From the IMG/VR virus record IMGVR_UViG_3300050821_002957, positions 62,001 to 126,000 of that record: DNA of 64,000 nucleotides. One strand, 5' to 3'. A model generated the notes under the pieces. That model ran no database searches. It was not told where the DNA came from and was given only the letters and a program-made list of their open reading frames with translations. Below are positions 147 through 59,434 of this stretch, in pieces (the stretch's first letter is position 1; every line of letters starts with the position of its first letter). The translations under genes and the position numbers were made by a program.

Positions 147-680
147 ATGGACCTCGAAAAAGCATTCTTTGCCATTCAAGATCAACTTCGTATCGCCGAG
201 ATGGAATACACCAAAACTCAACTTGGTCTCCGTCAAGAGGTTGAACGAAACATCAATCGCTTCATGGCTACTCTTGACATCACGAAAACTGTCGCCGATC
301 TACGTGAGGCCCATGTCAAAGCGGGAAAACTCATGATTGAAGAGAAGGAACGCAAAGCACAGGCCGGGGAAAATGCACCGTACCCAATCGGCACCAAAAT
401 GAAATGCACGAAACTAGTTCGTCGTCATGGTCGTTATCGTGGCGACGAAACTACGATCTACGGCGTCGTCGAAGGCGTGACTCGTGATACAGTTTTGCCT
501 ATGACAATGGGATGCCGGTCGTGGCGTAAACCAGCCATCGGCAGCTACATCGTTCGTATTCTGAAAGCTGATGGGACACCTGGGAAAAATTTTGAAGAAC
601 TTTATGATCGCTGGACTCCGATGGACGAAACCATCCAGCGCAACGTGCCGGTTCTTCAAGTCACAGAGGAAATGCTTTAA
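147..680 (+). CDS. hypothetical protein (N-terminal coiled coil)
   Basis: 177-aa ORF tightly packed in the early gene run. Confidence 0.75.
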   Translation: MDLEKAFFAIQDQLRIAEMEYTKTQLGLRQEVERNINRFMATLDITKTVADLREAHVKAGKLMIEEKERKAQAGENAPYPIGTKMKCTKLVRRHGRYRGDETTIYGVVEGVTRDTVLPMTMGCRSWRKPAIGSYIVRILKADGTPGKNFEELYDRWTPMDETIQRNVPVLQVTEEML

Positions 681-682
681 CT

Positions 683-889
683 ATGACACCAGCACTTACC
701 GAATACCTTAAGACCGATTATCTGACCATTCTCGATCATCCGGCGCTTTCTCTCGACATGAAAGTCGGCTACCTGATGGCCGTCGTCAACATCGATCCGG
801 CTGCACACGGAGCGTCTCATCTACCTTTACGGGAACTTGCAAAGGCTATGAGAACGTTCGTCAGTGCATACACGACAGGAAGCTGGTAA
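683..889 (+). CDS. hypothetical protein
   Basis: 68-aa ORF with tight spacing to neighbours. Confidence 0.65.
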   Translation: MTPALTEYLKTDYLTILDHPALSLDMKVGYLMAVVNIDPAAHGASHLPLRELAKAMRTFVSAYTTGSW

Positions 890-890
890 A

Positions 891-1127
891 ATGCTACTTC
901 ATTCCGAATTACAAGGCACACACGACGCCTACGGCCCAGCCATGACGATTCAGGAAATGCTTGACCTCCTGAGATCAATTCCACGGCAGGCTCGTCAAAA
1001 TTACTTGTCGATGGTGGACAAAGATGGTAACATTGTCGATGTCACCGGGCTGCATTTTGCCCAGAGCGACCAAGCAGAGAAGTGGGAATTCAAAGTTTAC
1101 GTCGTGACATCAAACAGCAAGGAATGA
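891..1127 (+). CDS. hypothetical protein
   Basis: ATG at 891 just after the previous stop. Confidence 0.65.
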   Translation: MLLHSELQGTHDAYGPAMTIQEMLDLLRSIPRQARQNYLSMVDKDGNIVDVTGLHFAQSDQAEKWEFKVYVVTSNSKE

Positions 1128-1128
1128 C

Positions 1129-1602
1129 ATGAAAAAATTATCCAAAGTCCATCTGAACAATCGAGACATCGTTACGGCAGCATTGCGTGAAACCTTACAG
1201 ACGTTCACTGAGGCGGTCGGTGAATACAATACAGAAGAGCAAGAGGCATTTGAGGTTCTTCAGACTGCCATCACTGCCTACAATGAACGCATGGTCGAAG
1301 CCTGGGAAAAGGTCGAAACAGCACAGACGGCGCACAACGAATCGATAGACGCCGCCAATGAGTGGATGGGCCAGATTGTTTCAGACATCGACGAATACAT
1401 GTCGGGCAAGTCTGAAAAATGGCAAGACGGTGACGCAGCACAGGCGTACTCTGAATGGAAAGCTGCGTTTGAAGAAGACCTCGAACAAGAAGACATGGAA
1501 CAACCGGAACAAATCGAAATCGAACAACCGGATGAACTCTCTCTTAACAGCGACGAAGATCCGGCTGATAAACTGGAACAACTACCCGAAGAATTGGGAT
1601 GA
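1129..1602 (+). CDS. acidic helical hypothetical protein
   Basis: 157 aa, E/D-rich, AAGGA Shine-Dalgarno. Confidence 0.75.
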   Translation: MKKLSKVHLNNRDIVTAALRETLQTFTEAVGEYNTEEQEAFEVLQTAITAYNERMVEAWEKVETAQTAHNESIDAANEWMGQIVSDIDEYMSGKSEKWQDGDAAQAYSEWKAAFEEDLEQEDMEQPEQIEIEQPDELSLNSDEDPADKLEQLPEELG

Positions 1603-1772
1603 TCTTTCAGAAGAGAAAAGACGGTCTGATTGAAGCCATCATTGCCTGGAAGAGCTATATTGTCGTTGGATATGGCTCTTCGGAAGAAAAGGCAGCGCTT
1701 AATGCATACCGAGCGATTTGCAACTCCATACTTGATTGACAAAAATCCAATCAATGCGACACTAAATACGCA

Positions 1773-2273
1773 TTGGTGGATGATCGCATACGTCAAAAAC
1801 TCGCTAATCTAGTTCGTCTGGCGAAGCGACCCGGTAACCCTCATGAGGGCGAAGCCGCTCGACTTGCTGCTATTCGACTGTCTCTGAAATATGGGATAGC
1901 GTGTGAATTTACTGCAAGCGGTACAAATCATACCAGTACTCGACCCACAGCGAGTGCGCCGCCGCAAAGTTCGACACAGGAGACCCCTGTTTCTGACGAT
2001 GTGATCTTCTACCAATGGATCAAAGCTCTAGCCAAACTTGGTTGGGGAATCCACGACTGCATCGACACCAAAATTGGACGCCAGATAAAATTCCGCAAAG
2101 CTGGTTACAATTCTGAATTACGAGTCACACAGAGGGCCAAGGGCAACGGTCAAGACTTTGAGGCCGAGCACATTAAACGTCCTGATTCAATCAATGGCGA
2201 GGATGTTTCCTTTTGCATTTTTATGACGATCCATCTTGGCGAACTCATCCGGCATATTTCATACACTAAATAG
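1773..2273 (+). CDS. protein with DUF2786-like N-terminus
   Basis: RIRQKLANLVRLAKRPGNPHEGEAARLAAIRL resembles the DUF2786 motif; CTAAATA upstream. Confidence 0.6.
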   Translation: MVDDRIRQKLANLVRLAKRPGNPHEGEAARLAAIRLSLKYGIACEFTASGTNHTSTRPTASAPPQSSTQETPVSDDVIFYQWIKALAKLGWGIHDCIDTKIGRQIKFRKAGYNSELRVTQRAKGNGQDFEAEHIKRPDSINGEDVSFCIFMTIHLGELIRHISYTK

Positions 2274-2277
2274 CATC

Positions 2278-2538
2278 ATGAAATCCAAGTCTCTAATCCT
2301 TTGGGCAGCGATCCTTTTCGCATTGGGGCGCATATTCATTACGCCTCGCCTGACGAACATTCCCACGGTGACGGGAACTTACGAATCACTGGCGCATTTG
2401 TTTGTTGGCTTTTTGATCCTCGTGCCCTTCTATGATCGTAAAGAAGAGCTTGGACCTTCCAAATTGTACGGTTGGATCGGCTGGGGACTAGCGAGCGGGG
2501 AAGCCGTCTGGTTTGCGGTACAAAAAATCCACGGATAA
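2278..2538 (+). CDS. small membrane protein (about 3 TM segments)
   Basis: Hydrophobic segments; ATG 5 nt after CTAAATA (2266-2272). Confidence 0.65.
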   Translation: MKSKSLILWAAILFALGRIFITPRLTNIPTVTGTYESLAHLFVGFLILVPFYDRKEELGPSKLYGWIGWGLASGEAVWFAVQKIHG

Positions 2539-2545
2539 ATAGGGC

Positions 2546-3058
2546 ATGAAACTGAGAGCCGTATTACCATTCTTGCTTTTACCCCTCCTTCTCGTATCAT
2601 CATCCCTATCTGTTGCTGATTCCGAAGCTGCCTCACCACAAGTCATTATGATGATGTATCATCGTGCGTATCCAAAGTACGTACCAGAACACATCACACC
2701 AGAATTTCTGAAAGAAAAACATGAATTAGAACAGGTCTACAAAAAGTGGGCTGTAATCTTTCATATGGAAGATTGGAATACAGAAGTGACGCCGGTCCCG
2801 CTTTCCTTCCTTAAAGAATTTTGTCCGTCTGAATGTTTTGCCGGAAGCAACTGGAACATCTATGACGAAAGCGGTGTAATGTTCATTCTCCAACGATCAG
2901 AATACACTAACGAAATGAAAAAGAGTTTGCGTCAGCGACATGTAAGTATCTGGTCTGATCAACGAAACAGCGTTCTTCATGAAATTCTTCACAATGTAAT
3001 TGAACATGGATACGAAGAAGCCGTAGTCAGCACACTTGCAAATTTGTTGAATCCCTGA
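2546..3058 (+). CDS. secreted protein with HExxH motif (putative zincin metallopeptidase)
   Basis: Signal peptide MKLRAVLPFLLLPLLLVSSSLSVA; LHEILH motif; ATAAATA promoter at 2535. Confidence 0.6.
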   Translation: MKLRAVLPFLLLPLLLVSSSLSVADSEAASPQVIMMMYHRAYPKYVPEHITPEFLKEKHELEQVYKKWAVIFHMEDWNTEVTPVPLSFLKEFCPSECFAGSNWNIYDESGVMFILQRSEYTNEMKKSLRQRHVSIWSDQRNSVLHEILHNVIEHGYEEAVVSTLANLLNP

Positions 3059-3070
3059 TAAGCTCGCTAA

Positions 3071-3895
3071 ATGGGCGTAGACGCACGTATTCTCCTTAAA
3101 ATCACCGATTCTGCCGCATGGCTCGATGCAGCACAACTTAGGAACATCTCAGCTAGGCTTACTGAGGCCATCGGCTACGACCACTTCTTCATCGATACAG
3201 ATGAAGATCGTCATGCAATTTCATTTGTAATCGACGAGAACAAAAAGTATCCCGCCGACTATGAACAGGAACCCGGCAAACCTTTCGATCCGACTGGTCC
3301 TGCGGTCTACGGACAAGATTCCAATGAAGAACCATATTTGATCGCCAAACCGAACGAACAATTTCTTGAAGTGCATCTATTCTCTCGATACTACGGTGAA
3401 GACTATGCTCGTGGGGATTGGCCGATGATCTACTTCACGCTGATGTGGTGCTTTCACAATATTCCTCATTGTGAAGTCTGGTACGGTGGTGATTCCAGCG
3501 GTTGTCTCATGGAACACATGACAGTGGAACGTATGGTCGAAGTGACAAAATTCTTTTTGACAACAGGCTACAAGACATATCGCACTTACGCCCGAGACCA
3601 TGAATACATCTGTGAATTTTGTAAGGTCATAGCTATTAGGTCTGGTGGCGGTGGTGGGACAGATTTTTATTCATGCGATTCCTGCGGCCAACATTGGAAC
3701 ATCGAACATGTAGGTGCATTCAAACGTTTGGTGACCCGGTTTGGAGATGAGCCGACCGACGACAAACACGACAACAAAATCCCGTCGTTTACGATGTCCC
3801 AACAAATGCGAGAAGGAAAACGCACACTCTATCCATTCGATGGCATTTTCCGCAAAAGATACGCTCCAAAGGTTGAAAAACAGACCGTTCAATAG
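3071..3895 (+). CDS. hypothetical protein with CxxC...CxxC zinc ribbon
   Basis: 274 aa; CEFC and CDSC motifs. Confidence 0.7.
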   Translation: MGVDARILLKITDSAAWLDAAQLRNISARLTEAIGYDHFFIDTDEDRHAISFVIDENKKYPADYEQEPGKPFDPTGPAVYGQDSNEEPYLIAKPNEQFLEVHLFSRYYGEDYARGDWPMIYFTLMWCFHNIPHCEVWYGGDSSGCLMEHMTVERMVEVTKFFLTTGYKTYRTYARDHEYICEFCKVIAIRSGGGGGTDFYSCDSCGQHWNIEHVGAFKRLVTRFGDEPTDDKHDNKIPSFTMSQQMREGKRTLYPFDGIFRKRYAPKVEKQTVQ

Positions 3896-3915
3896 CTCCT
3901 ATCTGATAGTGCCAC

Positions 3916-3951
3916 TTGACTTTAGCAGCAAAGTGTGGTAAGATGTATCTA
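3916..3951 (+). promoter_or_regulatory. sigma70-type promoter overlapped by an AGATGTATCTA box
   Basis: TTGACT-17-TAAGAT with TG extension; palindromic box at 3941-3951. Confidence 0.7.
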
Positions 3952-3976
3952 GTGGCGCATCTCAGAAAGGAGCAAT

Positions 3977-4477
3977 ATGCTGCTAAAAAATACATCCCAG
4001 TACAGTGATCAGATAGTACGGTTCATCGTCAAGCACGCCGCCAGCACTATCGATATAAGCAACGTTGCAATCAACGTCAAGAATTCTACTCATCGGTACG
4101 CTGGTCGAGCATTTCCGTACATTCCTTCTGAATCACCTTGGCGGGGAACTCCGAAGGCTCGATACCTGATCGTCTGTCGTGTCGGTGGGCCAAAATTATT
4201 CCCCTATCAATGCAAAGGATACCCCGGACGCAAAATTGAAAATGGTCGCTGGCCGACGCCTTTGCTCGCCGATTGGATGGAATGCATGGTCATGTTGGTT
4301 GCTCATGAACTTTTTCACATTCAGCAATTCCGTGTGAAAGCTCGATGCACCGAACTCGAAACTGAAGCCTTCGGAATGCGCCGCCTGGAAGCGTGGAGAG
4401 AGCTTGTCGCTGCTGGGAAGGTGCCGAGCCTGCCTCTTCAAACGAACGGCTGTAGCGTCTCAGAAGCGCAAGAATGA
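3977..4477 (+). CDS. putative zinc metallopeptidase (HExxH)
   Basis: AHELFH motif plus downstream ELETE; AAGGAG Shine-Dalgarno. Confidence 0.65.
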   Translation: MLLKNTSQYSDQIVRFIVKHAASTIDISNVAINVKNSTHRYAGRAFPYIPSESPWRGTPKARYLIVCRVGGPKLFPYQCKGYPGRKIENGRWPTPLLADWMECMVMLVAHELFHIQQFRVKARCTELETEAFGMRRLEAWRELVAAGKVPSLPLQTNGCSVSEAQE

Positions 4478-6776: not shown

Positions 6777-6994
6777 AACTCGTCCAAAAAATGCACAAAG
6801 GCGAAATTTGCTGGTTCGCCATATTCGACAACTATCCTAGATGCAATTCTTGGCTTATCGGACGAGTCTGGAAGATGCCAACTGTAGCCGATGCTATGCG
6901 AATTGTGAACGCTTGGAAAATTCTGGTGATCGATGGACGCCCGTATTACTTCGACAAATGGCGTACAAACACCCGGAAAGCATACGGCACATAA
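6773..6994 (+). CDS. hypothetical protein
   Basis: 73 aa, last gene of the + strand run. Confidence 0.55.
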   Translation: MKLVQKMHKGEICWFAIFDNYPRCNSWLIGRVWKMPTVADAMRIVNAWKILVIDGRPYYFDKWRTNTRKAYGT

Positions 6995-7020
6995 AACGCT
7001 CCCAGGACATTTCGACATAG

Positions 7021-7054
7021 AAAAGGCCCATCGGTGTCATCCGGTGGGCCAAAA
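7021..7054 (-). terminator. intrinsic terminator between converging transcription units
   Basis: GGCCCACCGG/CCGATGGGCC stem followed by TTTT on the minus strand. Confidence 0.75.
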
Positions 7055-7087
7055 TCGTTTATAGAGCGTTTCTGAGCGAAGAAAAGG

Positions 7088-9538
7088 CTACTTGGTGAAG
7101 TCTGAGAGCTTCATGTTGTCGCCCTGATCCTTCACAAATGGCTTCTTTGCTGCCCCACCATGCTTTGGACAGTTGCCGCCACCCGTTCTGTAAAGACATT
7201 TCTTGTCGCCGCAATACAAATGTGGATTCTTTTCTTTGTTGAGTCGAACTTTCATTGCTGTCGAGTCCCGACCGGCTTCAGCCAAGACAGCTTTGAGCAG
7301 ATTCATGTTCACTTCTTCGTAGTATGTTCCGCCCTGTGCGCCTCTGACTCGCTTCAATCCAAGGCTCGTCAGCGCATTATGTCTTGCTTTTGCATTTCCG
7401 GCACTCTTTTTACGAGATGCAATTTTGTTTAAGTGTTGATCAAGAGACTTAGCCGAGCTTCCTTCGTTCGGCGTCAAGCTCTTATTCGGACCACGATGTT
7501 TCCAGCTTCCTTCTGGTGAAAGATGAACTGACGATGTGTCCTTATGACGATATGTCGAATAGTGTTCTGGATCGCTACTGACGTGACTGTAACCATGCTT
7601 CTTCAAAACCTCATGATGTTGAGCATTGTACATCGCATGGTGTTCCATTTCCGATTCGTCAAACCGTTCTTTGTACTTCGCTGGTTTATCCTTTTTCGAC
7701 CGGATGACTTTCTTTGCAGGTGGCATTCCGACCGCAGCTTTTGATCTACGCTTCATGTCTTCCGGCGTATCTTTGATCGTCATCGTATTGCTTTTGAACT
7801 TGGCGAACTTATTCTTGCCTTCAGACACGTCACCTTTCCAGAAACCAGGATGATGTGTACCAACTTTCTTTTCGTACTTCTCTTGATCATCTGCATCGGT
7901 TGGATGAATTGCTGTTCCGAAAGATCCGTGCTTGACGTGGAGCTTCGATCCATCATGATGACGATATTCTGGTGTCTTATTTTCGTTCGATCCCATGTAC
8001 ATGTAATGCTTATCGTCCGAATCCTTTCTGATTAATGGATGCAAAATCGGCTTATCGACACTATGATCATAGTATCTGGTCTCATCGACTTTTTTGATCG
8101 ACCCCCAAGCAGCAGAGTCTTTCATCTTGGCTTTGTCGTTGTCGGCGAGGAGCTTCTTATCCGGGCACGGCATATCAACAGCGTGCATTCTTCCACAGGC
8201 TTCACACTTCTCTAGCTTGTTTGCTCTTTGGATGTCCTTCGAGTCAGCTTCTTTTAATTTTTCCCAACCAGTCTTCGCTTTTTTTCGTGCTTCCTGTCTA
8301 CGTTCGTTAGCTTTTTCAACATCATCGTCGGACCACATTTCTGGTGTGCTCTTACGATAAGAATCATACGGCGGATAACCAGTTTTGAGATGCCGTGTGC
8401 GCTCTTGCGTCTTGACATCCGGGTAACCTTCAGTGACAAGCTCATGATGCCATTCATGCCCACCATTTCCCTTTTGTGCAGCGGCTTGACGATTCAAATG
8501 ATCGACATAATCTTGTGGCTTCGGATACTTGTGCTGTACGTTTCCACCAAATTTTTTTGGGAGTTCATGGAAACGATCTTGGTGAGCAATGCTGTGCAAG
8601 TGATCGTTGGTAATGTCAGCAGTACGGCTCTTTCCAGTCGGAACGTGAGTAACTTTCATTTTACCAAGAACAGCCTTGTCATTACTTGTTGACTCCTTCA
8701 ATTCTGCCTTATGCATTTTTGCTTGCTTGTCGTGATGATTCCAACGATTTACGTTAGGTTGGAAATTGGAGCCTTTAGGTGGTTGCGGAGCAAATTCACT
8801 ACCTCTCGCTTTCAAATGAGCATTCATTGCCGAACGATGATCTTCTGGCTTGTTAGTTTTGTACGCCAGTCGAGTTGCTTTAGCTGCTAAAAGAGAATGT
8901 CCAGGATTTGCATCTGATCCAATCTCAATAGAGCCATTGCTAAATCCGCCACTTTCATTAACATTGTTCTCTGGGCCGAGCGCACGAGCAGTGTGAATCG
9001 ACTGAGGATGATCAGTAGTAGGATGACGGTCGCCGCAGACTGCACAGTGAGTGCTCTGATCTGCTTCTTCAACCTTTTTGACTCGACCACCACCATGACA
9101 AGTATGACAATCCGTAGCGTCATTCTTGCCTCTGAGTGAACCAACACCATGACACGTCGGACAAGGAGTGTATCCAGGTGCAGCCGTCCATGAATTGGTG
9201 TGCTTGCTGGCATCTTTCACCCATGCGGTAGCTTCTGACAAAACATTTTTTAACAGAACTTCGGTCTCTTCTCTAACAGTGTGAAAGCGAGTGTCATGAC
9301 CGGCTTTTTTCATAGCTGTCTTTGCTGCCTTTTCGGTCGCAGCATGAACGGTATCTACGTGTCTGTTGCTGGTCATGTCAATAACTCTCCACGGCTTCTT
9401 TGGCGTATTCTCTTTTTCATGCACATGAGTCACATCGCCATAGTCACCAGTAGCGTAGGCTGTATCGTTTTTGAAGCGATGAGCCATACTGGTCATTTGG
9501 GTGTCCGCTTGATTCTTGCGCTTTGAAGTATAGTTCAT
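7088..9538 (-). CDS. His/Lys-rich putative head-internal polyprotein
   Basis: 816 aa of short modules, several with CxxC, separated by (V/L)-x-E-(A/S/G/T) sites typical of T4-type prohead protease substrates. Confidence 0.6.
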   Translation of the reverse strand: MNYTSKRKNQADTQMTSMAHRFKNDTAYATGDYGDVTHVHEKENTPKKPWRVIDMTSNRHVDTVHAATEKAAKTAMKKAGHDTRFHTVREETEVLLKNVLSEATAWVKDASKHTNSWTAAPGYTPCPTCHGVGSLRGKNDATDCHTCHGGGRVKKVEEADQSTHCAVCGDRHPTTDHPQSIHTARALGPENNVNESGGFSNGSIEIGSDANPGHSLLAAKATRLAYKTNKPEDHRSAMNAHLKARGSEFAPQPPKGSNFQPNVNRWNHHDKQAKMHKAELKESTSNDKAVLGKMKVTHVPTGKSRTADITNDHLHSIAHQDRFHELPKKFGGNVQHKYPKPQDYVDHLNRQAAAQKGNGGHEWHHELVTEGYPDVKTQERTRHLKTGYPPYDSYRKSTPEMWSDDDVEKANERRQEARKKAKTGWEKLKEADSKDIQRANKLEKCEACGRMHAVDMPCPDKKLLADNDKAKMKDSAAWGSIKKVDETRYYDHSVDKPILHPLIRKDSDDKHYMYMGSNENKTPEYRHHDGSKLHVKHGSFGTAIHPTDADDQEKYEKKVGTHHPGFWKGDVSEGKNKFAKFKSNTMTIKDTPEDMKRRSKAAVGMPPAKKVIRSKKDKPAKYKERFDESEMEHHAMYNAQHHEVLKKHGYSHVSSDPEHYSTYRHKDTSSVHLSPEGSWKHRGPNKSLTPNEGSSAKSLDQHLNKIASRKKSAGNAKARHNALTSLGLKRVRGAQGGTYYEEVNMNLLKAVLAEAGRDSTAMKVRLNKEKNPHLYCGDKKCLYRTGGGNCPKHGGAAKKPFVKDQGDNMKLSDFTK

Positions 9539-11290
9539 TTACTTCTTCTTGCCCACCATGCCCACGTTCCACTTAACGTGTTGTTTGCATTTTTCATTCG
9601 GATGTTCAGCAGCAACCTTTCCACAATTGTTGCAAATTGGATCTTTGAGCTTCTTCTTTTGATCGGCTGTCAAACCTTCCGCCATCAACTTGGCGTACTC
9701 TTGTGAAATAGTTACCGACTCAGTTTTGACTCCACCCGGTTTGTCGCCCGGAAAGCCAGTTTTCTTTTTTGCTGCGGTATGCTTTACGTAATTCTTCTCG
9801 TCAACCAAACCAGGAGTGCCATGTTTGCCGCCCATATTGAGAACCCACCCGCCATGACTAGAACGCATGACAGCTTTGCCTCTTTGTGTTTGACCTTGAG
9901 GAGTTTTGATGTGAACTGTGTCACCGTGACCAATTTCATTAAAGGCTTCGACGATTTCTTCTTCGGCCATATCATTGTGCGAGTCTGGTCCACTGTAATG
10001 CTGACACATTGGGCTGTGCTTCTCATTATCATGGCAAGAGCTTACGCAATCTTTGGTTGGTTTGAATTTTCCAACAGCAAGTCCTTGAGAACGAGACGAC
10101 CGCATAAGTGCTGCTTTGTCGTCAGAAACGTCTTCTACGATTGCACTAACTTTTTTTTTAGGATCTACAGATTCCATAAGACCGGCCACTTCAGCACGGT
10201 GTTTGATGTAACCAGCAGCCGCAGCAATGATCGGATCGACTTCTTCATTCTGAGAAGCAGTATCGTTCATTCCCTTCATGCGATTATTGGCTTTTTGAAT
10301 TGCCTTTGGTCCCTTGTCTTCCGGGTCGGCCTGCATGTTTGAAAATGCATTCGCCGGATTGTACATAATTGCTGATGCATGTGAGATCACGTCCGCATCG
10401 CCACCAGGAGTCTGTGGATAAGCAGTAGGAATGTGAGCCTGTTGTGTCACACCGAAATCATCAGCTTCATTCTTTGATGTTGGGCACATGCACATCGAGC
10501 CATTGCAAGATTTCGGCATATTACCACTGGAGCCACCACATGTCGGGCAATAGCTGCATGGACAATTTTTTGTGGTACAAGTATTTTTTGCTTTCTCATC
10601 TTCAGTCATACCGACCATTGCATCATTGGCATCTTGAAAATTTGCAGCTTCACCCTCGTAGGTTGCGCCTTCTGGGTTATTTGCATAATCAGCTTGAGGA
10701 TTGTTGAATCCAATCTCACCTTCGCCCATAACACGCTTTATTTGTGCTTGTGCTCTACGACGCTTCGGGACAACTTTGTTTGCAACTTTGTTTACGACGC
10801 CCTTCATCTTATTCAAAATTTCGCCTTCATAAGTTGCGCCCTTTGGATTTTTTGCATAATCGGCTTCCGGGTCTTTGAATTCAATGTCGGTCTCACCCAT
10901 CATGTCAGGAGAGGAAGACTCTTCATCTTCACCAAGAGAATGATGATTCTTGGCTGCGCTCTTCATAGCCTTTGCGCCGTACTTTTCTACACCGACCTTG
11001 TGAGCGATGGCACCTGCGTAAGCAGCACTCTTTCCACCAGCTTCGAGCTTACCTACGAGCTTCTTGAAACCAATATGCTTCTCAGCTACGAAGACTTCTA
11101 CTAACTGTTTTGCCGTTTCAAACGCAATGCCCTGTGCAATACGAATGCCCATACGTTGCTGATTGTTATTGTACACCGATTCATAGATGTCGTTGACTTC
11201 CTTACGAACATCTTCAGGCAAAGAAGCGTAAGCCGGATATTTTGCAATGTCATTGGTCTCGACATCGTTCATGTTTCTAAAAAAGCTCAT
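9539..11290 (-). CDS. putative head-internal polyprotein or scaffold-like protein
   Basis: 583 aa with frequent hydrophobic-x-E sites; internal repeat GE.EI.F..P.ADYA.NP.GATYEGE; late promoter at 11321-11327. Confidence 0.6.
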   Translation of the reverse strand: MSFFRNMNDVETNDIAKYPAYASLPEDVRKEVNDIYESVYNNNQQRMGIRIAQGIAFETAKQLVEVFVAEKHIGFKKLVGKLEAGGKSAAYAGAIAHKVGVEKYGAKAMKSAAKNHHSLGEDEESSSPDMMGETDIEFKDPEADYAKNPKGATYEGEILNKMKGVVNKVANKVVPKRRRAQAQIKRVMGEGEIGFNNPQADYANNPEGATYEGEAANFQDANDAMVGMTEDEKAKNTCTTKNCPCSYCPTCGGSSGNMPKSCNGSMCMCPTSKNEADDFGVTQQAHIPTAYPQTPGGDADVISHASAIMYNPANAFSNMQADPEDKGPKAIQKANNRMKGMNDTASQNEEVDPIIAAAAGYIKHRAEVAGLMESVDPKKKVSAIVEDVSDDKAALMRSSRSQGLAVGKFKPTKDCVSSCHDNEKHSPMCQHYSGPDSHNDMAEEEIVEAFNEIGHGDTVHIKTPQGQTQRGKAVMRSSHGGWVLNMGGKHGTPGLVDEKNYVKHTAAKKKTGFPGDKPGGVKTESVTISQEYAKLMAEGLTADQKKKLKDPICNNCGKVAAEHPNEKCKQHVKWNVGMVGKKK

Positions 11291-11323
11291 TGTATAGGTC
11301 TCCCACGTAGGTGCTAGTCGTAT

Positions 11324-11914
11324 TTAGAGTTTTGACAACCTACAATGTCTGCTATTAAACATTTTTTCTTTTGTAGTTTCTGACAAAATTTTCCCTTTAT
11401 GAGCACGACCGATAGCTGCTTTGGCTTCATCTGAGTGCGAATAGGTCATTCCAACTGCGTACTGATTTCCTCTCATCTGTTCCCGTTTTCGTGCCCGACC
11501 TTCTTCAGTGAGCTTTGCTTGCTTTGCCCATTCAGCGGCCTGGAGTCTGGCCTCAGGATGTTTTTGAAAGTAAACCACCCTGCACTCTCGAAGTTTTTGT
11601 TTAGTCGCTTCAGAATGTTTGTGACCGTAACCTTCACCACCCGGCTTCATGTTATAGCCTGTTTCTATTGTGTTGAGTTTAACGATCCAATCTCGTTCTT
11701 TCTGATTGAGTGATTCTTTATCAGTAGCGACATCTATTGTTTCGATCAGAAAGACTTCAGAACCATATTTTCGGATCGCACGATGAATGGTAGTTTGAGA
11801 GCCTTTTCGTACTTCTGATTTATGTTGCTGAAATCGCTTCATTGCAGTAACCATCGTTTTGCCAACGTACTGCTTTCCATTGATTGTGTTTGTAAGAGTG
11901 TAAATAATCATCAC
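11324..11914 (-). CDS. GIY-YIG homing endonuclease with NUMOD3 motifs (Seg-like)
   Basis: IIYTLTNTINGKQYVGKT...RFQQH...E...N; HSEATKQK, HSDEAKAA and LSETTKEK repeats. Confidence 0.9.
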   Translation of the reverse strand: MMIIYTLTNTINGKQYVGKTMVTAMKRFQQHKSEVRKGSQTTIHRAIRKYGSEVFLIETIDVATDKESLNQKERDWIVKLNTIETGYNMKPGGEGYGHKHSEATKQKLRECRVVYFQKHPEARLQAAEWAKQAKLTEEGRARKREQMRGNQYAVGMTYSHSDEAKAAIGRAHKGKILSETTKEKMFNSRHCRLSKL

Positions 11915-11941
11915 TCTTATATAGGCTCAATGAAGAATTGA

Positions 11942-12685
11942 CTACCCCATGATAAAATCTATAGGCAATTGGAATTCGTCGTGAACTTGCTGTTCTAACT
12001 TTTCGATATTGTCGAGTGCTTTTTGGTAAATGTCGGCACCGTTTAAAGTTACACCACCGAGCAGGGCAACTCCTTGATATTTAATCAGGTTCTCACCCCA
12101 CTGACGCCGTAGCAATTCAGTCGTATAGGCCATCAGCCAACGATCTCGATAGACATCTGGGTAAACATCCGGGTCCAAAATTCTATAACATTCAATAATG
12201 TAGTAATCGCCGACAGAGACCGACGACCAATCCAACAGAATGCGAAGTTGCATCTGGTGACGAACAAACAAGATACCAGGGTCCGCATTGAACTCAAATT
12301 CCAAGAGTGCAAGATGCTTCTGCATGATGTCGTAGTGAATGATCGATGTACTCGTAAAAGTATACAAGTCATTCAAGCGCATCTGATATTGAACGTCGAA
12401 CAACCCGATGTTGCTGGCATTTGAATTTGCAGTCGGCAAAACACGAGTAACAGAGATGATCGGGGCCGGAATCGGAATGTACTCATTTGTAATATCCTGA
12501 GCCGTCATTTGATGGGCAAGATACACTCTTTCTACGCCGTCGAAGTGATAGTCTTGAAAGTAGAGAAAGGCATCATCTACACGGTCTTCAATTTGCCCTG
12601 GATCGAGGTTAATTTCGATTACAGGAGCACCAAGTCTACGTAAGCAATAGTCGATCAGTTCTTGTCGGTTTGTTGGTAACGCCAT
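11942..12685 (-). CDS. gp13: neck protein, T4 gp13 homologue
   Basis: LIDYCLRRLGAPVIEINLD..QIEDRVDDA..YFQDYHFDG; QWGENLIKY.GV.L.GGVTLNG. Confidence 0.92.
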   Translation of the reverse strand: MALPTNRQELIDYCLRRLGAPVIEINLDPGQIEDRVDDAFLYFQDYHFDGVERVYLAHQMTAQDITNEYIPIPAPIISVTRVLPTANSNASNIGLFDVQYQMRLNDLYTFTSTSIIHYDIMQKHLALLEFEFNADPGILFVRHQMQLRILLDWSSVSVGDYYIIECYRILDPDVYPDVYRDRWLMAYTTELLRRQWGENLIKYQGVALLGGVTLNGADIYQKALDNIEKLEQQVHDEFQLPIDFIMG

Positions 12686-12693
12686 ATCACTAT

Positions 12694-13779
12694 TTATTGC
12701 CAGCTTACTAAGGTAACAGAAGTAGACAAACCAGTTCCAGTATCAGGGCCAACAAAAAATCCTAACGTTGCAGGCATTCCAGTGTATGTGGTCCTAGCCA
12801 GTGTTCTGAAAGGTAGAAAAACCAAGCCATCCATTGAATAGGTGTATGTGATGTTTACACCATCGTCGGAAACTCTGAACCACATTATTGGCCCTACATA
12901 GTTACCGTTCGGAGCAGTTGCATCTAAACCACCCCAACTATTTGGACCACTCCAATGTTCTGTTGCTAACATATAATTGGTGGTTCCTTGATTCACCAAT
13001 CCCATGCTGAAAAATGCTCCCGTTGAATCTGAGACCATAATACCTAAATTAGACCAGGCTCCGTTCGATTGAGCTAACATGAAACCGGCTGTTCTTGTAT
13101 ATGGTGTAGACGGCAAAGGAATTGTAGCACCTACAATCATGTTACAAGATGATGCTGTTCCAGTCAGAGTCATAACTCCATTCGTCACCAAAGTTCCAGC
13201 ACCACCACAATTACCTGCCAAATTCAAAGGAGTCCACGAAAGGTTGCTAGGAAGAGTTACCGGAAAACCCAACACCCAATCTGCCCAAGTAAAACCATCG
13301 CATTCACTTACATCTGGTATATCAGTTGAATAATACAGAGCACCTGCGGAAGCACATGTAGGACGAGCAGAAAATGTTCCTCTAGTAGCACTGGAGCCTC
13401 CTCCACCACCACCGGAAGCATTGATCGTAATGCTCGCTAGACCACCGCTAAAAGATGGTGTAAGGGAAATACCAGAACCAGGAACTAAATTAAAAGTCGT
13501 AGCCGTACCCACAGCGGAACCATTACTCTGAATCGGCAAAGAACCAGGAGGCGTAGCAGTGATAATGGTCTGATTGTTTACAGAATCGTCGGTGCAAGTC
13601 GTGCCAGTGCTACAGTTCAACACAGGTCTTGGTGTTAACATGCTACCTGCATTCTTGATGATATAATATGCAGCCTGTGTGATCCCACTTCCTTTGACTT
13701 CAAGATTGACTGCCGCAATCAATACCATAATGCTAACGATGAATGCGATTGTATGTTTGATGTTGAACCGATTTTTCAT
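12694..13779 (-). CDS. fibre-like protein with N-terminal signal or TM segment and C-terminal beta-sandwich
   Basis: Hydrophobic N-terminus, Gly/Thr-rich linkers, lectin-like C-terminus. Confidence 0.6.
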   Translation of the reverse strand: MKNRFNIKHTIAFIVSIMVLIAAVNLEVKGSGITQAAYYIIKNAGSMLTPRPVLNCSTGTTCTDDSVNNQTIITATPPGSLPIQSNGSAVGTATTFNLVPGSGISLTPSFSGGLASITINASGGGGGGSSATRGTFSARPTCASAGALYYSTDIPDVSECDGFTWADWVLGFPVTLPSNLSWTPLNLAGNCGGAGTLVTNGVMTLTGTASSCNMIVGATIPLPSTPYTRTAGFMLAQSNGAWSNLGIMVSDSTGAFFSMGLVNQGTTNYMLATEHWSGPNSWGGLDATAPNGNYVGPIMWFRVSDDGVNITYTYSMDGLVFLPFRTLARTTYTGMPATLGFFVGPDTGTGLSTSVTLVSWQ

Positions 13780-13781
13780 AT

Positions 13782-15380
13782 TTAATGTGCTCCCATTCCG
13801 TACACTGCAACATATCCGCTGTTGGTGGTTACGAATATTTTACCATCGGCCACTAAAGGTGATACATATTTAGCCATGCTTCCTAACGCATCACCAACTA
13901 CATTAGTGCTGTTCCAATATTCCGACAACGTTACGGGATTATAAGCGTATAATACTCCCGACCGTATTGAACCGAATGCTCCTCCAGCGGTCGTGGCTAC
14001 AAACCACAATATTCCATTGAAGGCACCCATTGAAGAAATCGTCATAGCACTCGCACCAGGGAAAGAAAAATTCGTTCCTGAAATTGTAGGTGTGGTGTTA
14101 AATGTTGTTCCACTATACGTAAAAGCGTAGATTGGACCACCAGTGATTGGAAGGTACAAAGTATTCAAACCAAAAGCGCCGCCATAAGAGCCGGAAGAAC
14201 CTCCGTAAATATTATTACCTGTAGTCGTAAAATTCTGTAGCGGACACCCCGAAGAACCTTGCAAATGTCCCATACACGAAGTACTGACATTATACACACT
14301 AAAATCTTTACCAGCGATCTCTAATTGACCTCCAGGTAACAGCATAACTCGCCCTGAACTAAGGTCTGCATCCGAGCCATTTAAAGCTGCATAGTTAGCT
14401 GGAGTAAACCAATCCACAACAGCAAGTGTCGGACTCAACTTGACCACCGACTCACCATAATTGGTAGTACCATCATAGGTTCCGTTGCCAGTTGCTACGT
14501 ACAAATTCCCTGAGGCATCTACAGCAGGACCACCGCCAGCCATCCAAACCCCGCCGCCATAGCCATTAGGTGTAGAGCACCAAATACCAATTTGCGATAA
14601 ACTGGTAGTCGAATAACCCACTACCCATCCGTGATAAACACCATTGTCTTCTGGCATCCCAGCAAATGCTACATAAACATTTCCGTTAGCCAAAGTAATG
14701 GATGATCTACCGTTTGCAAGAAAGCTGTTTAACACTACATTAGATCCGCTTAGATCATCCCCGCCTCCGGGATTACCACCGCCTACTACCGTTCCTGACA
14801 CCACGATTGTATTTAAGAGTGTTCCAGTGGTCAAACTTAAAATTCTGATTTGCCACGAAGGTGAAGTAGCGTCTCCACATAACAAGTAAAGTTTTTGAGC
14901 TACAACATCTACTGCCGGGGTCGCAATACAACCTAAATGTCCTTGATAATAACCTTCAGATCCAGACGAACCTGGATATGAGGCAATAGAGTTTCCTATC
15001 ACATTGGTCCAAACAGATGTGAAACGATTGGCATCATAAGCATAGACCCGATTTTCAGCGGTAGCCACGATGATCAAATCTTGTTGACCAGAAGATGTAA
15101 CGACACCAGGGACAAACAAAGGCTGAGTCCATGCATCTCCAATTATTGGTAATGTAGTGAGTAGCCCAAAATGTCCTCCAGTGACATTCGCTGGAGTTAA
15201 CACAAATTCTAGATTATTCCAACTTCTTCTATTGGTGTCCCAATGCCCTGTAAGCATTGATATGGGGGCTTGAGGTACAGCCACCGGACTAAAGACATTT
15301 GATTGTGCCCCGAGAGGCAAACTATTTGAGTTGGAAAAAATAAGAAGAAAAACGATCCATTTAATAAGAGTACGTGACAA
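13782..15380 (-). CDS. secreted PQQ-like beta-propeller protein
   Basis: Signal peptide; [31 protein letters not shown]...L...DADL.S and P.VADGK.FV motifs. Confidence 0.75.
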
Positions 15381-17698: not shown

Positions 17699-18796
17699 CT
17701 ATACGAGCGGATTTGGACCTCGAACCAAGAGAAGATTGTGAGCAAACTTAAACAAATGGCCCATCTGCCCGTTAGTAATGTCTCCTTGGAGCAATGCAAA
17801 GTAAATCATCGTTCCACGAATGTTTCCTATCAGACCACTGTCACCAATGAACTTTGGTAGAGCTTCTTCAGACAAATCATAAATGCCGACTTTTGTTGCA
17901 ACATTAGAATTAACCGAAAGACGAGTGTCTAGCTGCTGGTCGGTTGGGTTGTAACGTTGAACTACGACAAAGGGAACATTCACGGTTGGAAAAAATTTTC
18001 CGGTCCATGCTTCTACTTGAAGGTCAACTGCGAAGCCGATATCAGTGTTGTAACGTAGTTTGTAGTAACCATCTGTACCACCTTCACCCCAGACAGCAAT
18101 CACATCGTCAGAAGTATCCAATGTCTCTGGTTGAACAATTGCAAAGACCGTATACGTCGAAGTACTTGCCATGTGACCTGCAATCAAAGGTATGTTCGAC
18201 GATGTGATGTATTGTGATCCATCCAATCGTAATCCTAAATTCGTGTACACGCCTGGAGCCGACAACGTACCATCGATTCCATTGCCCGACAAATCTTTGA
18301 TCGTAGTTGGGTTAGAACCTTCATAAAATCCGTATTCGACCAGCAAATTTGGAAGATTAATGGTATAGGCAATGACAGCAGAACCTAGTTGTGTCTGTTG
18401 TGTCGTCACTTGAACAGTGCTATTGGCTAATTGGGTCTGTATCGTCGTATTGCGAACCGACGTGTTTCCGATTTGCGGTCTGACCGTCGTATTTTGAATA
18501 TCTGCTCCACCAACTTGTGAAGCATCAAAAGTTACTTGAAATCTGGAAATACCCGGCTGTGTTTGGGCTGTTGTATTTTGAATTGCAGCCCCGCCAGCCT
18601 GTTGCTTTGGATTGGTAGTCTGAATACGTGCCTTGCCGGTCTGACAGCGTTGTAGCCCCGTTCCAGGCCCAACACGGTCCTCTTCTCCTTGCATGGCGAC
18701 CAACAGTTCTCCGTTCGTCGAATCCAACCAACCTTGTTTCGTCAGTTCGGCTTCAGGATAGAACGTCGGTGGGGTGTCCAGAGTCCATAGAGGCAT
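17699..18796 (-). CDS. virion protein with 14-aa repeats and a LamG/ConA-like domain
   Basis: About 7 TTxQTQxGxAxIQ repeats followed by DLSGNG.DGTL; late promoter at 18803-18809. Confidence 0.65.
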   Translation of the reverse strand: MPLWTLDTPPTFYPEAELTKQGWLDSTNGELLVAMQGEEDRVGPGTGLQRCQTGKARIQTTNPKQQAGGAAIQNTTAQTQPGISRFQVTFDASQVGGADIQNTTVRPQIGNTSVRNTTIQTQLANSTVQVTTQQTQLGSAVIAYTINLPNLLVEYGFYEGSNPTTIKDLSGNGIDGTLSAPGVYTNLGLRLDGSQYITSSNIPLIAGHMASTSTYTVFAIVQPETLDTSDDVIAVWGEGGTDGYYKLRYNTDIGFAVDLQVEAWTGKFFPTVNVPFVVVQRYNPTDQQLDTRLSVNSNVATKVGIYDLSEEALPKFIGDSGLIGNIRGTMIYFALLQGDITNGQMGHLFKFAHNLLLVRGPNPLV

Positions 18797-20005: not shown

Positions 20006-20015
20006 ATTACAACGC

Positions 20016-20049
20016 AAAAGAGCGCCGGGACCGAAATCCAAGCGCTCCT
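20016..20049 (-). terminator. intrinsic terminator
   Basis: GAGCGCTTGGA/TCCCGGCGCTC stem plus TTTT on the minus strand. Confidence 0.55.
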
Positions 20050-20063
20050 CTGATACCTTTTTG

Positions 20064-22881: not shown

Positions 22882-23137
22882 TCTTCTCCTCCAGCAATTT
22901 ATAAACTAGCTTCTTTAATTCCGCTACGTCTGTTCGCAAACTATTTAGTTCTCTATCCTTTGCACGCTGGTCTGCGAGCTTCTTCATCGCATTGTCATGT
23001 GCTCTCTGTGATTTTCTCAGAGCACCGACATTCGTATTAATCACGCCCATACTGAACGTGTCACGCACCAAAGAATTGTTACCATTGATGTTCAAGTACT
23101 TTGGAATAGATGACTTAGGTATTGGTCTTTTACTCAT
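22853..23137 (-). CDS. conserved small protein typically found downstream of DUF4815
   Basis: LVRD..S..VINTN motif plus C-terminal coiled coil. Confidence 0.7.
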   Translation of the reverse strand: MSKRPIPKSSIPKYLNINGNNSLVRDTFSMGVINTNVGALRKSQRAHDNAMKKLADQRAKDRELNSLRTDVAELKKLVYKLLEEKNADTTDSNN

Positions 23138-59400: not shown

Positions 59401-59434
59401 TATTTATACTAGCAGTCTTTTGGAATCCTGTCAA
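59401..59434 (-). promoter_or_regulatory. overlapping sigma70 and T4-late promoters of the tRNA operon
   Basis: TTGACA(59434-59429)-17-TAGTAT(59411-59406), overlapping TATAAATA(59408-59401). Confidence 0.8.

What the first reader, a model, noticed from the sequence alone, without database searches (positions are those of the whole stretch)
7088..11290. Two large modular proteins punctuated by prohead-protease-type sites: candidate injected-peptide polyproteins
Seen: the 816-aa protein is a string of short basic His-rich or CxxC modules ending in VRE|E, LSE|A, VEE|A, VNE|S, LKE|S, VTE|G, LKE|A, VDE|T, VSE|G, FDE|S and LAE|A. The 583-aa protein has IYE|S, MGE|T, MGE|G, MTE|D, LME|S, IVE|D, IVE|A and MAE|G. 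Both lie behind a late promoter. Established: T4 gp21 cleaves after Glu in (I/L/V)-x-E, and T4 internal proteins are injected and can block restriction enzymes. Inference: one gene yields a library of small packaged effectors or DNA-condensing peptides.
Basis: partly seen in the sequence, partly recalled or inferred. Interest (0 to 1): 0.62.

Follow-up and report, generated by a model that had tools for sequence, protein, structure and literature searches.

The report
Protease-punctuated cassette polyproteins in jumbo phage
Two neighbouring late genes of an uncultivated 405-kb T4-like phage encode strings of small protein cassettes, and in the larger one the cassette joints carry the cutting motif of the phage's head-maturation protease, which suggests (no protein data yet) that one gene supplies a dozen small basic proteins to the virus head.

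Summary

Evidence for the 816-aa protein:
- [ILV]-x-E-[AGST] occurs 9 times against 1.5 expected, the strongest excess among 459 ORFs of the genome.
- The excess is specific for Glu at P1.
- The next most enriched ORFs include the scaffold, the S77 (gp21-type) prohead protease and small core proteins.
- Eleven of the 13 hydrophobic-x-E sites lie within 10 residues of independently defined homology-block boundaries (p<0.0002). The same holds inside 31 homologues (p=0.005).
- Cassettes recur in other orders in relatives and as free-standing small phage genes. Some of these carry short leaders ending in a hydrophobic-x-E site, like the T4 capsid-targeting sequence.

The 583-aa protein is weaker. 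Only a loose motif is enriched and boundaries do not track sites overall, but three joints are conserved.

The "late promoter" is CTAAATA, this phage's own upstream motif, not T4's TATAAATA.

The gene pair sits between gp13 and gp14 in at least six related contigs and varies far more than gp13.

Best reading: prohead-cargo polyproteins cut by the prohead protease. Cleavage, packaging and injection are all untested. No known family matches. I class it as a new variant of a known kind.

The parts
11321..11327 (-). CTAAATA late-promoter-like motif, 37 nt upstream of the 583-aa ATG. It overlaps the stop codon of the GIY-YIG gene.
   Evidence: Sequence read. It is the most enriched upstream 7-mer of the genome (46 vs 5.1 expected). 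48 of 79 genomic copies lie within 100 nt upstream of ORF starts, many of them structural genes.
9539..11290 (-). 583-aa protein (B583): conserved N-terminal helical domain, variable middle, SH3-like module, C-terminal CxxC...CxxH tail.
   Evidence: ORF. 35 homologues. Mosaic domain table. AF2 model with mean pLDDT 60.6.
10928..11290 (-). B583 residues 1-121: conserved folded helical N-terminal domain, ending at LGE|D.
   Evidence: pLDDT 81-95 over residues 10-115. It is N-terminal in at least 12 homologues of different length. Many invariant columns.
10820..10900 (-). B583 residues 131-157: first copy of a 27-aa internal repeat. The copy starts with the MGE motif (P1 Glu at residue 133).
   Evidence: Read directly from the translation. 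Aligned in relatives.
10649..10729 (-). B583 residues 188-214: second copy of the repeat. It also starts with the MGE motif (P1 Glu at residue 190).
   Evidence: Read directly from the translation. Aligned in relatives.
9746..9946 (-). B583 residues 449-515: SH3-like beta module, starting directly after IVE|A (446-448).
   Evidence: pLDDT 90-97. Shared by 32 homologues. ESM Atlas structural matches to free-standing 73-77 aa viral proteins, TM 0.65-0.78. BFVD matches to 53-80 aa phage proteins. Hydrophobic-x-E within 14 aa upstream in 16 of 32 homologues vs 7.2 expected.
7088..9538 (-). 816-aa protein (A816): N-terminal leader plus about 12 cassettes.
   Evidence: ORF. Motif statistics. Module table. 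AF2 model with mean pLDDT 65, beads on a string.
9416..9538 (-). A816 residues 1-41: conserved N-terminal leader, ending VHE|K.
   Evidence: Matches residues 1 to about 40 of at least 10 proteins of 187-576 aa, always at their N-terminus. Invariant columns. These proteins occupy the same locus.
9269..9415 (-). A816 residues 42-90: basic cassette (pI 10.1), ending VRE|E.
   Evidence: Found at the N-terminus of the 108-aa protein P0073 (whose genomic context was not examined), inside P0049, and at the C-terminus of the B-family member P0009.
9233..9268 (-). A816 residues 91-102: 12-aa spacer ending in the conserved LLxxVLxE|A element. The element recurs at residues 745-754.
   Evidence: Conserved in all four A-family sequences.
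9065..9232 (-). A816 residues 103-158: DnaJ-type CxxCxGxG double zinc-finger cassette, ending VEE|A.
   Evidence: Pfam PF00684 below threshold (17.5 vs 32.7 bits). Homology to the small proteins P0062 (99 aa) and P0093 (51 aa), context not examined.
8954..9064 (-). A816 residues 159-195: CxxC...H...H zinc-knuckle cassette, ending VNE|S.
   Evidence: Present at different positions in at least 11 homologues.
8693..8953 (-). A816 residues 196-282: helical basic cassette, ending LKE|S.
   Evidence: pLDDT 86-97. Free-standing homologues P0048, P0050, P0061, P0132-P0134. Four of them have 20-25 aa leaders with hydrophobic-x-E sites. P0133 follows a tail-tube gene, with CTAAATA upstream of its ATG.
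8429..8692 (-). A816 residues 283-370: His-rich cassette, ending VTE|G.
   Evidence: Present in P0003 and absent from L003 and P0002.
8249..8428 (-). A816 residues 371-430: disordered start then helical segment, ending LKE|A.
   Evidence: AF2 helix 404-439. Boundary cluster at residue 430 from 8 hits.
8081..8248 (-). A816 residues 431-486: CxxC...H...C zinc cassette, ending VDE|T.
   Evidence: Shared with P0060, P0063, P0065, P0076 and P0046.
7820..8080 (-). A816 residues 487-573: beta-rich His-rich cassette, ending VSE|G.
   Evidence: pLDDT 84-89. Shared with P0042, P0057 and P0058. The site is conserved in all four A-family sequences.
7655..7819 (-). A816 residues 574-628: Lys-rich cassette (net charge +11), ending FDE|S.
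   Evidence: Free-standing 87-aa gene P0071 has an 11-aa leader ending VLE|A and a stop codon upstream in frame.
7277..7654 (-). A816 residues 629-754: alpha/beta His-rich cassette, ending LAE|A.
   Evidence: pLDDT above 90. Also present in the B-family proteins P0013, P0015 and P0029.
7091..7276 (-). A816 residues 755-816: C-terminal zinc-ribbon cassette.
   Evidence: More than 70 clusters of free-standing 43-133 aa proteins match, mostly from their residue 2-7. The example P0067 lies among small ORFs near recombination genes.
11324..11914 (-). Context: GIY-YIG homing endonuclease inserted between gp13 and B583.
   Evidence: PHROG 314, E=3e-33. Present in two related contigs and absent from L003.
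11942..12685 (-). Context: gp13-type neck protein directly upstream.
   Evidence: PHROG 211, E=2e-38. 84% identical to the L003 gene that carries PF26809 Phage_T4_gp13.

Best explanation
A816, and less certainly B583, are late-expressed cargo polyproteins of the prohead.

Proposed mechanism:
1. The pair is transcribed late from the CTAAATA site, just after the neck gene gp13.
2. A conserved N-terminal leader (A816 1-41; B583 about 1-120) brings the protein into the assembling head core.
3. The phage's S77 (gp21-type) prohead protease cuts after Glu in hydrophobic-x-Glu followed by a small residue, at the cassette joints.
4. About a dozen peptides and mini-proteins of 1.4-14 kDa are released, mostly basic, His-rich or zinc-binding. 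They correspond to the single-cassette internal proteins that other T4-like phages encode as separate genes.
5. These stay with the packaged DNA and probably enter the host with it.

Shown here:
- the ORFs, the motif excess and its Glu specificity;
- the coincidence of sites with cassette boundaries;
- cassette shuffling and free-standing homologues;
- the late-type upstream motif;
- the conserved but hypervariable locus;
- the presence of the protease, with the same motif at the site homologous to the T4 capsid-protein cut and a high motif density in the scaffold.

Inferred: targeting by the leader, actual cleavage, retention in the head, injection, and what the cassettes do. Nucleic-acid or metal binding is only a guess from composition.
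For: Protease and its substrates:
- S77 protease in the genome, 130 bits.
- Capsid-protein propeptide site LME|A.
- Scaffold with 16 sites, and the protease and neighbouring core proteins also motif-rich.

Motif in A816:
- Rank 1 of 459 ORFs, 9 sites vs 1.5 expected.
- P1 Glu-specific and P1' small.

Sites and boundaries:
- Recurrent homology-block boundaries lie 6.8 aa from the nearest site vs 31 for random positions and 29 for random Glu (p<=0.0002).
- Replicated in 31 homologues: 12.7 vs 17.6 aa, p=0.005.
- Sites conserved across the A family although the flanking cassettes come and go.

Cassettes as independent units:
- The same cassettes appear in other orders, and in both the A and B families.
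- Free-standing homologues of the 196-282 cassette have 20-25 aa leaders with hydrophobic-x-E sites. One sits behind CTAAATA after a tail-tube gene in a T4-like contig.
- P0071 has an 11-aa leader ending VLE|A.

Composition:
- Other ORFs of this genome with N-termini like the T4 capsid-targeting sequence are also basic and 8-11% His. A816 is 7% His.
- T4 internal proteins are highly basic (PMC8442874), whereas this phage's scaffold has pI 4.8.

B583 and the locus:
- L-x-E|small directly before the SH3-like module in the T4-type relatives but not in the distant homologues.
- Locus gp13 - B - A conserved in at least six contigs.
- gp13 is 84% identical between two of these phages, B is 52% and A is mosaic.
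Against: - There are no protein data. The phage is a metagenomic record with no cultured relative that carries these genes.
- Neither protein has the T4-type 10-aa capsid-targeting sequence.
- The genes lie about 45 kb from the head module, next to neck and fibre genes.
- For B583 the strict motif is not enriched, and boundaries do not track sites.
- Several A816 sites fall in predicted helices rather than linkers (residues 90, 102, 430, 754).
- In T4, peptides from multiply cut core proteins mostly leave the head.
- Several free-standing cassette homologues have no leader and lie in regions that look early or accessory. A virion role is therefore not intrinsic to the cassettes.
- The homologues are related to each other, so the replicate tests are not fully independent.
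Confidence: 0.55

Rival explanations
1. Sacrificial core or scaffold-accessory proteins. They enter the prohead and are cut at the same sites, but the fragments are expelled before DNA packaging, as for T4 gp22, gp67 and gp68. Their role would be head-size or core assembly in a very large capsid, not delivery of effectors.
For: - Site density is like that of the scaffold.
- In T4 the fragments of multiply cut core proteins mostly leave the head (PMC9026906).
- A 405-kb genome implies a much larger capsid than T4's (inference from genome size).
Against: - A816 is basic (pI 9.4), whereas the scaffold has pI 4.8.
- The cassettes are folded mini-domains with free-standing homologues in many phages.
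- The locus is hypervariable while gp13 next door is 84% conserved. That is unusual for an architectural protein.
- There is no coiled-coil scaffold-like architecture.
Confidence: 0.15
2. Uncleaved multidomain virion or injected proteins of the polyvalent-protein type. Only the leader, or nothing, is removed. The hydrophobic-x-E-small pattern is a feature of the helical ends of cassettes or linkers.
For: - Multi-cassette mosaic architecture in a phage, next to head-completion genes, as described for polyvalent proteins (PMC5512222).
- Some sites lie in predicted helices.
Against: - The excess is specific for Glu (not Asp) and for orientation.
- The same excess marks the ORFs homologous to known protease substrates.
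- Distant homologues of the SH3-like module lack the motif, so the fold does not need it.
- None of the signature polyvalent domains is present.
Confidence: 0.15
3. Late, non-virion proteins, for example zinc-finger or His-rich assembly helpers or regulators acting in the cytoplasm. The motif pattern would then have no link to the protease.
For: - The genes sit outside the head module.
- One cassette resembles the DnaJ zinc finger.
- There is no capsid-targeting sequence of the T4 type.
Against: - Rank 1 motif enrichment in the genome, with sites at cassette boundaries.
- Leader-bearing free-standing homologues.
- Composition shared with ORFs whose N-termini resemble the T4 capsid-targeting sequence.
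Confidence: 0.1

Closest known systems
[quoted passage not shown]
   Same: - Small, highly basic proteins.
- Made late and brought into the prohead core by an N-terminal leader.
- Released by gp21 after L/I-x-E and injected with the DNA.
- Highly diverse between related phages.
- Free-standing homologues of two A816 cassettes have just this layout.
   Different: - Here about 12 cassettes are fused in one 816-aa chain with a site at most joints.
- The leaders (41 aa, and about 120 aa) do not resemble the 10-aa T4 sequence.
- There is no sequence similarity to IPI-III.
- Packaging and injection are not shown.
T4 prohead core proteins gp22, gp67 and gp68
   Same: - Cut at many L/I-x-E sites by the prohead protease into small peptides.
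- This phage's scaffold has 16 such sites.
   Different: - Those proteins are acidic or architectural, lie in the head module, and their fragments mostly leave the head.
- A816 is basic, built of folded zinc or His-rich mini-domains, hypervariable, and lies next to gp13.
Polyvalent proteins of phages and conjugative elements (Iyer et al. 2017, PMC5512222)
   Same: - Many unrelated domains in one polypeptide.
- Mosaic and fast-evolving.
- Predicted to be packaged and delivered with the DNA.
- Release of domains by proteolysis has been proposed.
   Different: - None of the signature domains (zincin-like peptidase, ADP-ribosyltransferase, helicase, methylase and others) is found.
- There is no embedded peptidase; the cut would be made in trans by the head protease.
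- The cassettes are much smaller (37-126 aa).
Ejection and inner-body proteins of phiKZ-like giant phages (SPN3US gp53 and gp54)
   Same: Abundant internal head proteins, cut after Glu at several motif sites by a distant gp21 homologue.
   Different: - There the multiple cuts destroy a long N-terminal propeptide and leave one mature protein.
- The motif differs, and there is no sequence relation.

Membership tests
T4-type internal proteins (CTS-bearing, gp21-processed) | The phage encodes a gp21/S77 prohead protease. | tested here: met
   PF03420, 130 bits, at genome 24478-25206.
T4-type internal proteins (CTS-bearing, gp21-processed) | An N-terminal capsid-targeting sequence of about 10 aa, ending in L/I-x-E. 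| tested here: not met
   - The A816 leader is 41 aa and ends VHE|K. The first motif in B583 is at residue 26.
- Neither resembles MKTYQEFIAE.
- Leaders ending in a hydrophobic-x-E site are present in free-standing cassette homologues (P0048, P0071, P0132-P0134), and CTS-like N-termini in at least 8 other ORFs of this genome.
T4-type internal proteins (CTS-bearing, gp21-processed) | A single cut that leaves one mature basic protein. | tested here: not met
   11-13 candidate sites spread along A816. The predicted products are mostly basic.
T4-type internal proteins (CTS-bearing, gp21-processed) | Present in the mature head and injected. | not testable with these tools
   Metagenomic phage with no proteome.
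Polyvalent proteins (Iyer et al. 2017) | 2-15 distinct domains in one phage or plasmid polypeptide, with mosaic architectures. | tested here: met
   About 12 homology blocks, shuffled among relatives.
Polyvalent proteins (Iyer et al. 2017) | Signature conflict domains (zincin-like peptidase, ART, SNF2, methylase, ParB and others). | tested here: not met
   No Pfam, NCBIfam or PHROG hit apart from a sub-threshold DnaJ zinc finger.
Polyvalent proteins (Iyer et al. 2017) | Linked to the head, portal or packaging genes. | tested here: inconclusive
   The genes directly follow neck gene gp13 behind a late-type motif. They are about 45 kb from the portal and protease.
Prohead scaffold and core proteins (gp22, gp67, gp68) | A high density of prohead-protease sites. 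| tested here: met
Prohead scaffold and core proteins (gp22, gp67, gp68) | Homology to, or position in, the head module between the portal and the capsid protein. | tested here: not met
   No family hit. The scaffold-like gene is elsewhere, at genome 22322-23887.
DnaJ central zinc-finger domain (PF00684), for cassette 103-158 only | A profile match above the curated cut-off. | tested here: inconclusive
   17.5 bits vs 32.7 required. Two CxxCxGxG motifs are visible in the sequence.

The most novel reading that the evidence does not exclude
A clade of T4-like phages (two contigs of 370-405 kb plus shorter fragments) keeps a hypervariable two-gene locus in which internal-protein-like cassettes are strung into polyproteins. 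Other phages encode the same cassettes as single genes, either leader-bearing late genes or small genes in regions that look early. The head-maturation protease then acts as a dispenser that releases a combinatorial set of small zinc or His-rich effectors inside the capsid. They are injected ahead of gene expression and act in host takeover or counter-defence.
Probability: 0.3. Interest if true: 0.8.

Novelty: new variant of a known kind. Interest (0 to 1): 0.66.

Why it matters
If the joints are really cut, this extends the T4 internal-protein scheme from one gene per cargo to one gene for a dozen cargos.

- It would give a simple sequence rule for finding packaged proteins in uncultivated T4-like phages: a leader, cassettes and Glu-specific joints.
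- It points to about 15 uncharacterised small protein families (zinc ribbons, an SH3-like barrel, His-rich domains) as candidates for proteins that act in the first moments of infection.
- It suggests that the same small proteins can be delivered either by early expression or by pre-loading.
- It offers natural leaders and linkers for loading several foreign proteins into T4-type capsids.

Tried and rejected
- Family scans of both proteins and of ten single cassettes (Pfam, PHROGs, NCBIfam, PDB sequences) gave nothing beyond a sub-threshold DnaJ zinc finger and a weak "virion structural protein" PHROG hit for B583 133-234, E=0.002.
- Megablast and tblastn against 50,697 phage records found no match for either gene.
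- Back-translated pattern scans of IMG/VR found none.
- No paralogues exist in the genome.
- Foldseek of the A816 model against the PDB gave a best E of 0.38; weak rows included the T4 MotA C-domain, which I did not use.
- Complex prediction with the protease and A816 residues 80-125 gave no verdict (score 0.01). It counts neither for nor against binding.
- Sigma-70 promoter and terminator scans of 6800-12000 were no better than shuffles.
- I rejected the canonical T4 late promoter TATAAATA, which is absent here.
- I rejected the idea that B583 sites mark boundaries in general (p about 0.3-0.5).
- A neck, whisker or fibre role was considered because of the position next to gp13. It was rejected because there are no fibrous repeats, the composition is basic and zinc or His-rich, and the architecture is mosaic.
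- NCBI-sourced homologues carried no names.
- The reads tools were not used, because RNA or DNA reads cannot show proteolysis.

Full report
**Setting**

The window is bases 62001-126000 of a single 405,631-bp virus record that CheckV rates complete. It is a T4-type myovirus:
- Gp23 capsid protein (PF07068, 468 bits).
- S77/gp21 prohead protease (PF03420, 130 bits).
- gp5, gp6 and gp8 baseplate proteins and a gp13-type neck protein inside the window.

Its capsid protein is closest (61-63% identity) to those of Pelagibacter phage HTVC008M, the Methylophilales Melnitz phages and cyanophages. No cultured phage in the 50,697-record collection carries either gene of the finding.

**The observation**

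Both ORFs are real and lie on the minus strand:
- B583 at 9539-11290.
- A816 at 7088-9538, abutting it.

A816 has pI 9.42 and is 7.0% His against a genome mean of 2.4%. It has four Cys clusters.

The "late promoter" is not T4's TATAAATA, whose only copy in the window is at 59401. It is CTAAATA, 37 nt upstream of the B583 start.
- CTAAATA is the most over-represented 7-mer upstream of ORFs in this genome (46 vs 5.1 expected).
- It precedes the portal, baseplate and fibre genes.
- I read it as this phage's late-promoter element by analogy with T4. That is an inference.

**Is the motif more than chance?**

For A816, yes.
- [ILV]xE occurs 11 times vs 5.4 expected (p=0.011).
- [ILV]xE[AGST] occurs 9 times vs 1.5 expected, and no shuffle reaches it.
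- Across 459 ORFs of at least 100 aa, A816 ranks first (Poisson 3e-5).
- The next ranks are informative. They include the 521-aa scaffold-like protein between the capsid protein and the protease (16 loose sites), the protease itself, and the small proteins beside it. These are the counterparts of the known T4 gp21 substrates gp22, gp21, gp67 and gp68 (PMC9026906).
- The capsid-protein propeptide ends in LME|A, just before the conserved mature N-terminus.
- The excess in A816 is specific. With Asp at P1 the count is 2 vs 1.85 expected. Eight other P1 residues show no significant excess, and the reversed motif gives 1 vs 1.6.
- P1' is small in 10 of 13 sites (p=4.5e-4).

For B583 the strict motif is not enriched (3 vs 1.7). 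Only forms that allow Met or Phe at P3 and acidic P1' are enriched (15 vs 8.5, p=0.011; 11 vs 3.6, p=0.001).

**Anatomy from homology**

The word search found only two partial relatives of A816 but 35 of B583. The exhaustive search with A816 found 96. A domain table resolves A816 into blocks that recur independently.

| Residues | Block |
|---|---|
| 1-41 | N-terminal leader, always at residue 1 of at least 10 proteins of 187-576 aa |
| 48-91 | basic cassette |
| 104-178 | DnaJ-like CxxCxGxG zinc finger |
| 153-200 | CxxC..H..H knuckle |
| 207-289 | helical basic cassette |
| 288-375 | His-rich cassette |
| 427-483 | zinc cassette |
| 486-571 | beta-rich His-rich cassette |
| 569-632 | Lys-rich cassette |
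| 625-754 | alpha/beta His-rich cassette |
| 755-800 | C-terminal zinc ribbon |

Several cassettes also occur in B-family proteins:
- block 625-754 in P0013, P0015 and P0029;
- block 48-91 at the C-terminus of P0009.

So the two genes draw on one cassette pool.

**Do sites coincide with cassette boundaries?**

Boundaries supported by at least 3 independent hits lie on average 6.8 residues from the nearest hydrophobic-x-E. The expectation is 31 for random positions and 29 for randomly chosen Glu residues (p<=0.0002). Eleven of 13 sites are within 10 residues of a recurrent boundary.

Inside 31 homologues, 98 block boundaries lie 12.7 residues from a site against 17.6 for random Glu (p=0.005).

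In the four-sequence A-family alignment the sites at 102, 282, 573, 628 and 754 are kept while the cassettes between them are gained or lost. An LLxxVLxE|A element occurs twice.

For B583 the global test fails (p about 0.3-0.5), but individual joints are conserved:
- xGMTE (230) and GLME|S (373) are invariant in seven sequences.
- L-x-E|small sits directly before the SH3-like module.
- That last motif is present in 16 of 32 homologues (7.2 expected). All 16 are among the closer relatives (P0005-P0029), and the motif is absent from the distant "DAIRxGDRVTI" group. This is a natural control showing that the fold itself does not need the motif.

**Cassettes as independent proteins**

- The C-terminal zinc ribbon matches more than 70 clusters of 43-133-aa proteins, mostly from their residue 2-7.
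- The 196-282 cassette has free-standing homologues of 72-98 aa.
- The 574-628 cassette has an 87-aa homologue with an in-frame stop upstream.
- The B583 SH3-like module matches free-standing viral proteins of 73-77 aa by structure, TM 0.65-0.78.

Some of these small genes lie among small ORFs next to replication or recombination genes, with no leader.

Others look like classical T4 internal proteins:
- P0048, P0132, P0133 and P0134 have 20-25-aa leaders with one or two hydrophobic-x-E sites just before the cassette.
- P0133 follows a tail-tube gene in a T4-like contig, with CTAAATA 15 nt upstream of its ATG.
- P0071 has an 11-aa leader ending VLE|A.

The T4 capsid-targeting sequence is MKTYQEFIAE, and it is cut once (PMC8442874).

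**Structure**

AF2 models are beads on a string.
- A816 has mean pLDDT 65. Confident cassettes are 211-290, 488-560, 630-745 and 760-800. The low-confidence linkers contain sites 41, 158, 195, 370, 486 and 573. Sites 90, 102, 430 and 754 fall in helices.
- B583 has a confident N-terminal helical domain (10-115) and an SH3-like barrel (441-515). The rest is low confidence.
- No PDB fold match was found.

**Locus**

The order gp13 - (GIY-YIG) - B - A - a block of small opposite-strand genes - Ku - RNA 2'-phosphotransferase - gp14 - gp15 recurs in the 370-kb contig L003 and in four shorter contigs.
- A-type genes range from 364 to 889 aa.
- B-type genes range from 221 to 563 aa.
- Between the window and L003, gp13 is 84% identical, B is 52%, and A is mosaic: 59% identity over the C-terminal 345 residues, with other cassettes replaced.

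**Interpretation**

The simplest account of all this is that A816 is a polyprotein of internal-protein-like cassettes, cut at its joints by the prohead protease. B583 would be a related carrier with fewer convincing joints.

This phage also appears to use T4-type targeting widely. At least eight other ORFs begin with CTS-like sequences. Three of them are basic and 8-11% His, the same odd composition as A816.

What happens after cutting is open. T4 precedent shows both retention and injection (the internal proteins and Alt) and expulsion (scaffold fragments). The basic charge and the folded cassettes favour retention. That is inference only.

My estimates:
- about 0.55 that the joints are cut by the head protease;
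- about 0.3 that the products act as injected effectors.

**Comparison and novelty**

The system works like T4 internal proteins multiplied within one chain. It resembles polyvalent proteins in logic (PMC5512222). It fails defining features of both: it has no T4-type targeting sequence and no single cut, and it has no signature domains and no embedded peptidase. I did not find a description of such arrays in the paper searches. I class it as a new variant of a known kind.

Noticed in passing
window 11321-11327 and upstream of the ORFs at 17699-18796, 23134-29919, 29963-31519 and 62425-63594 (all minus strand): CTAAATA is the dominant upstream motif of this genome (46 vs 5.1 expected). It marks structural genes, so it is probably this phage's variant of the T4 late promoter. 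TTGACA-type boxes are the other enriched class.
   Followed up: partly
window 11324-11914 (-): A GIY-YIG homing endonuclease sits between gp13 and B583, and its stop codon overlaps the CTAAATA motif. It is present at the same spot in two related contigs but absent from the 370-kb relative L003. It looks like a mobile insertion into a late operon.
   Followed up: partly
genome (outside the window) 241360-242247, 244266-244733, 244733-245311, 289877-290281, 369676-370587, 376621-377472, 19294-20364: At least eight ORFs start with sequences like the T4 capsid-targeting sequence (for example MKTFLEFILTE, MKTFAQFMTE, MLLTFIQFINE). Several are behind CTAAATA, and three are basic with 8-11% His. They are candidate single-cassette internal proteins.
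   Followed up: partly
genome 281663-282913 (-), locus L013: A poly(A) polymerase or CCA-adding tRNA nucleotidyltransferase (PF01743, E=2e-32) carries a CTS-like leader (MLSFTQFALLRE|S) and a CTAAATA motif. This may be an enzyme pre-loaded into the capsid.
   Followed up: partly
window 62425-63594 (-): A 389-aa protein (PHROG 3560, unknown function) sits behind CTAAATA. It has VVNE|G at residue 12 and ranks among the ORFs most enriched for the motif in the genome. It is another candidate protease substrate.
   Followed up: no
genome 26609-28408 (-), locus L001 (partly): A 599-aa protein lies in the head module, between the small core proteins and a 155-aa ORF upstream of the probable portal gene. 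It has pI 4.05, a run of several hundred residues made almost entirely of Asp and Glu, and two CxxC pairs. It is an unusual acidic core component.
   Followed up: no
window 13782-15380 (-) and 12694-13779 (-): Two proteins between the fibre gene and gp13. The 532-aa one has a weak PQQ/BamB-like beta-propeller signal (PF13360, below cut-off). The 361-aa one matches only an unknown PHROG. They are probably distal fibre or receptor-binding parts.
   Followed up: no
L003 17741-19306, L010 6597-8144: In relatives, Ku and an RNA 2'-phosphotransferase gene lie between the A gene and gp14. Pfam and PHROG scans of the larger plus-strand ORFs in window 147-4477 did not find them.
   Followed up: partly
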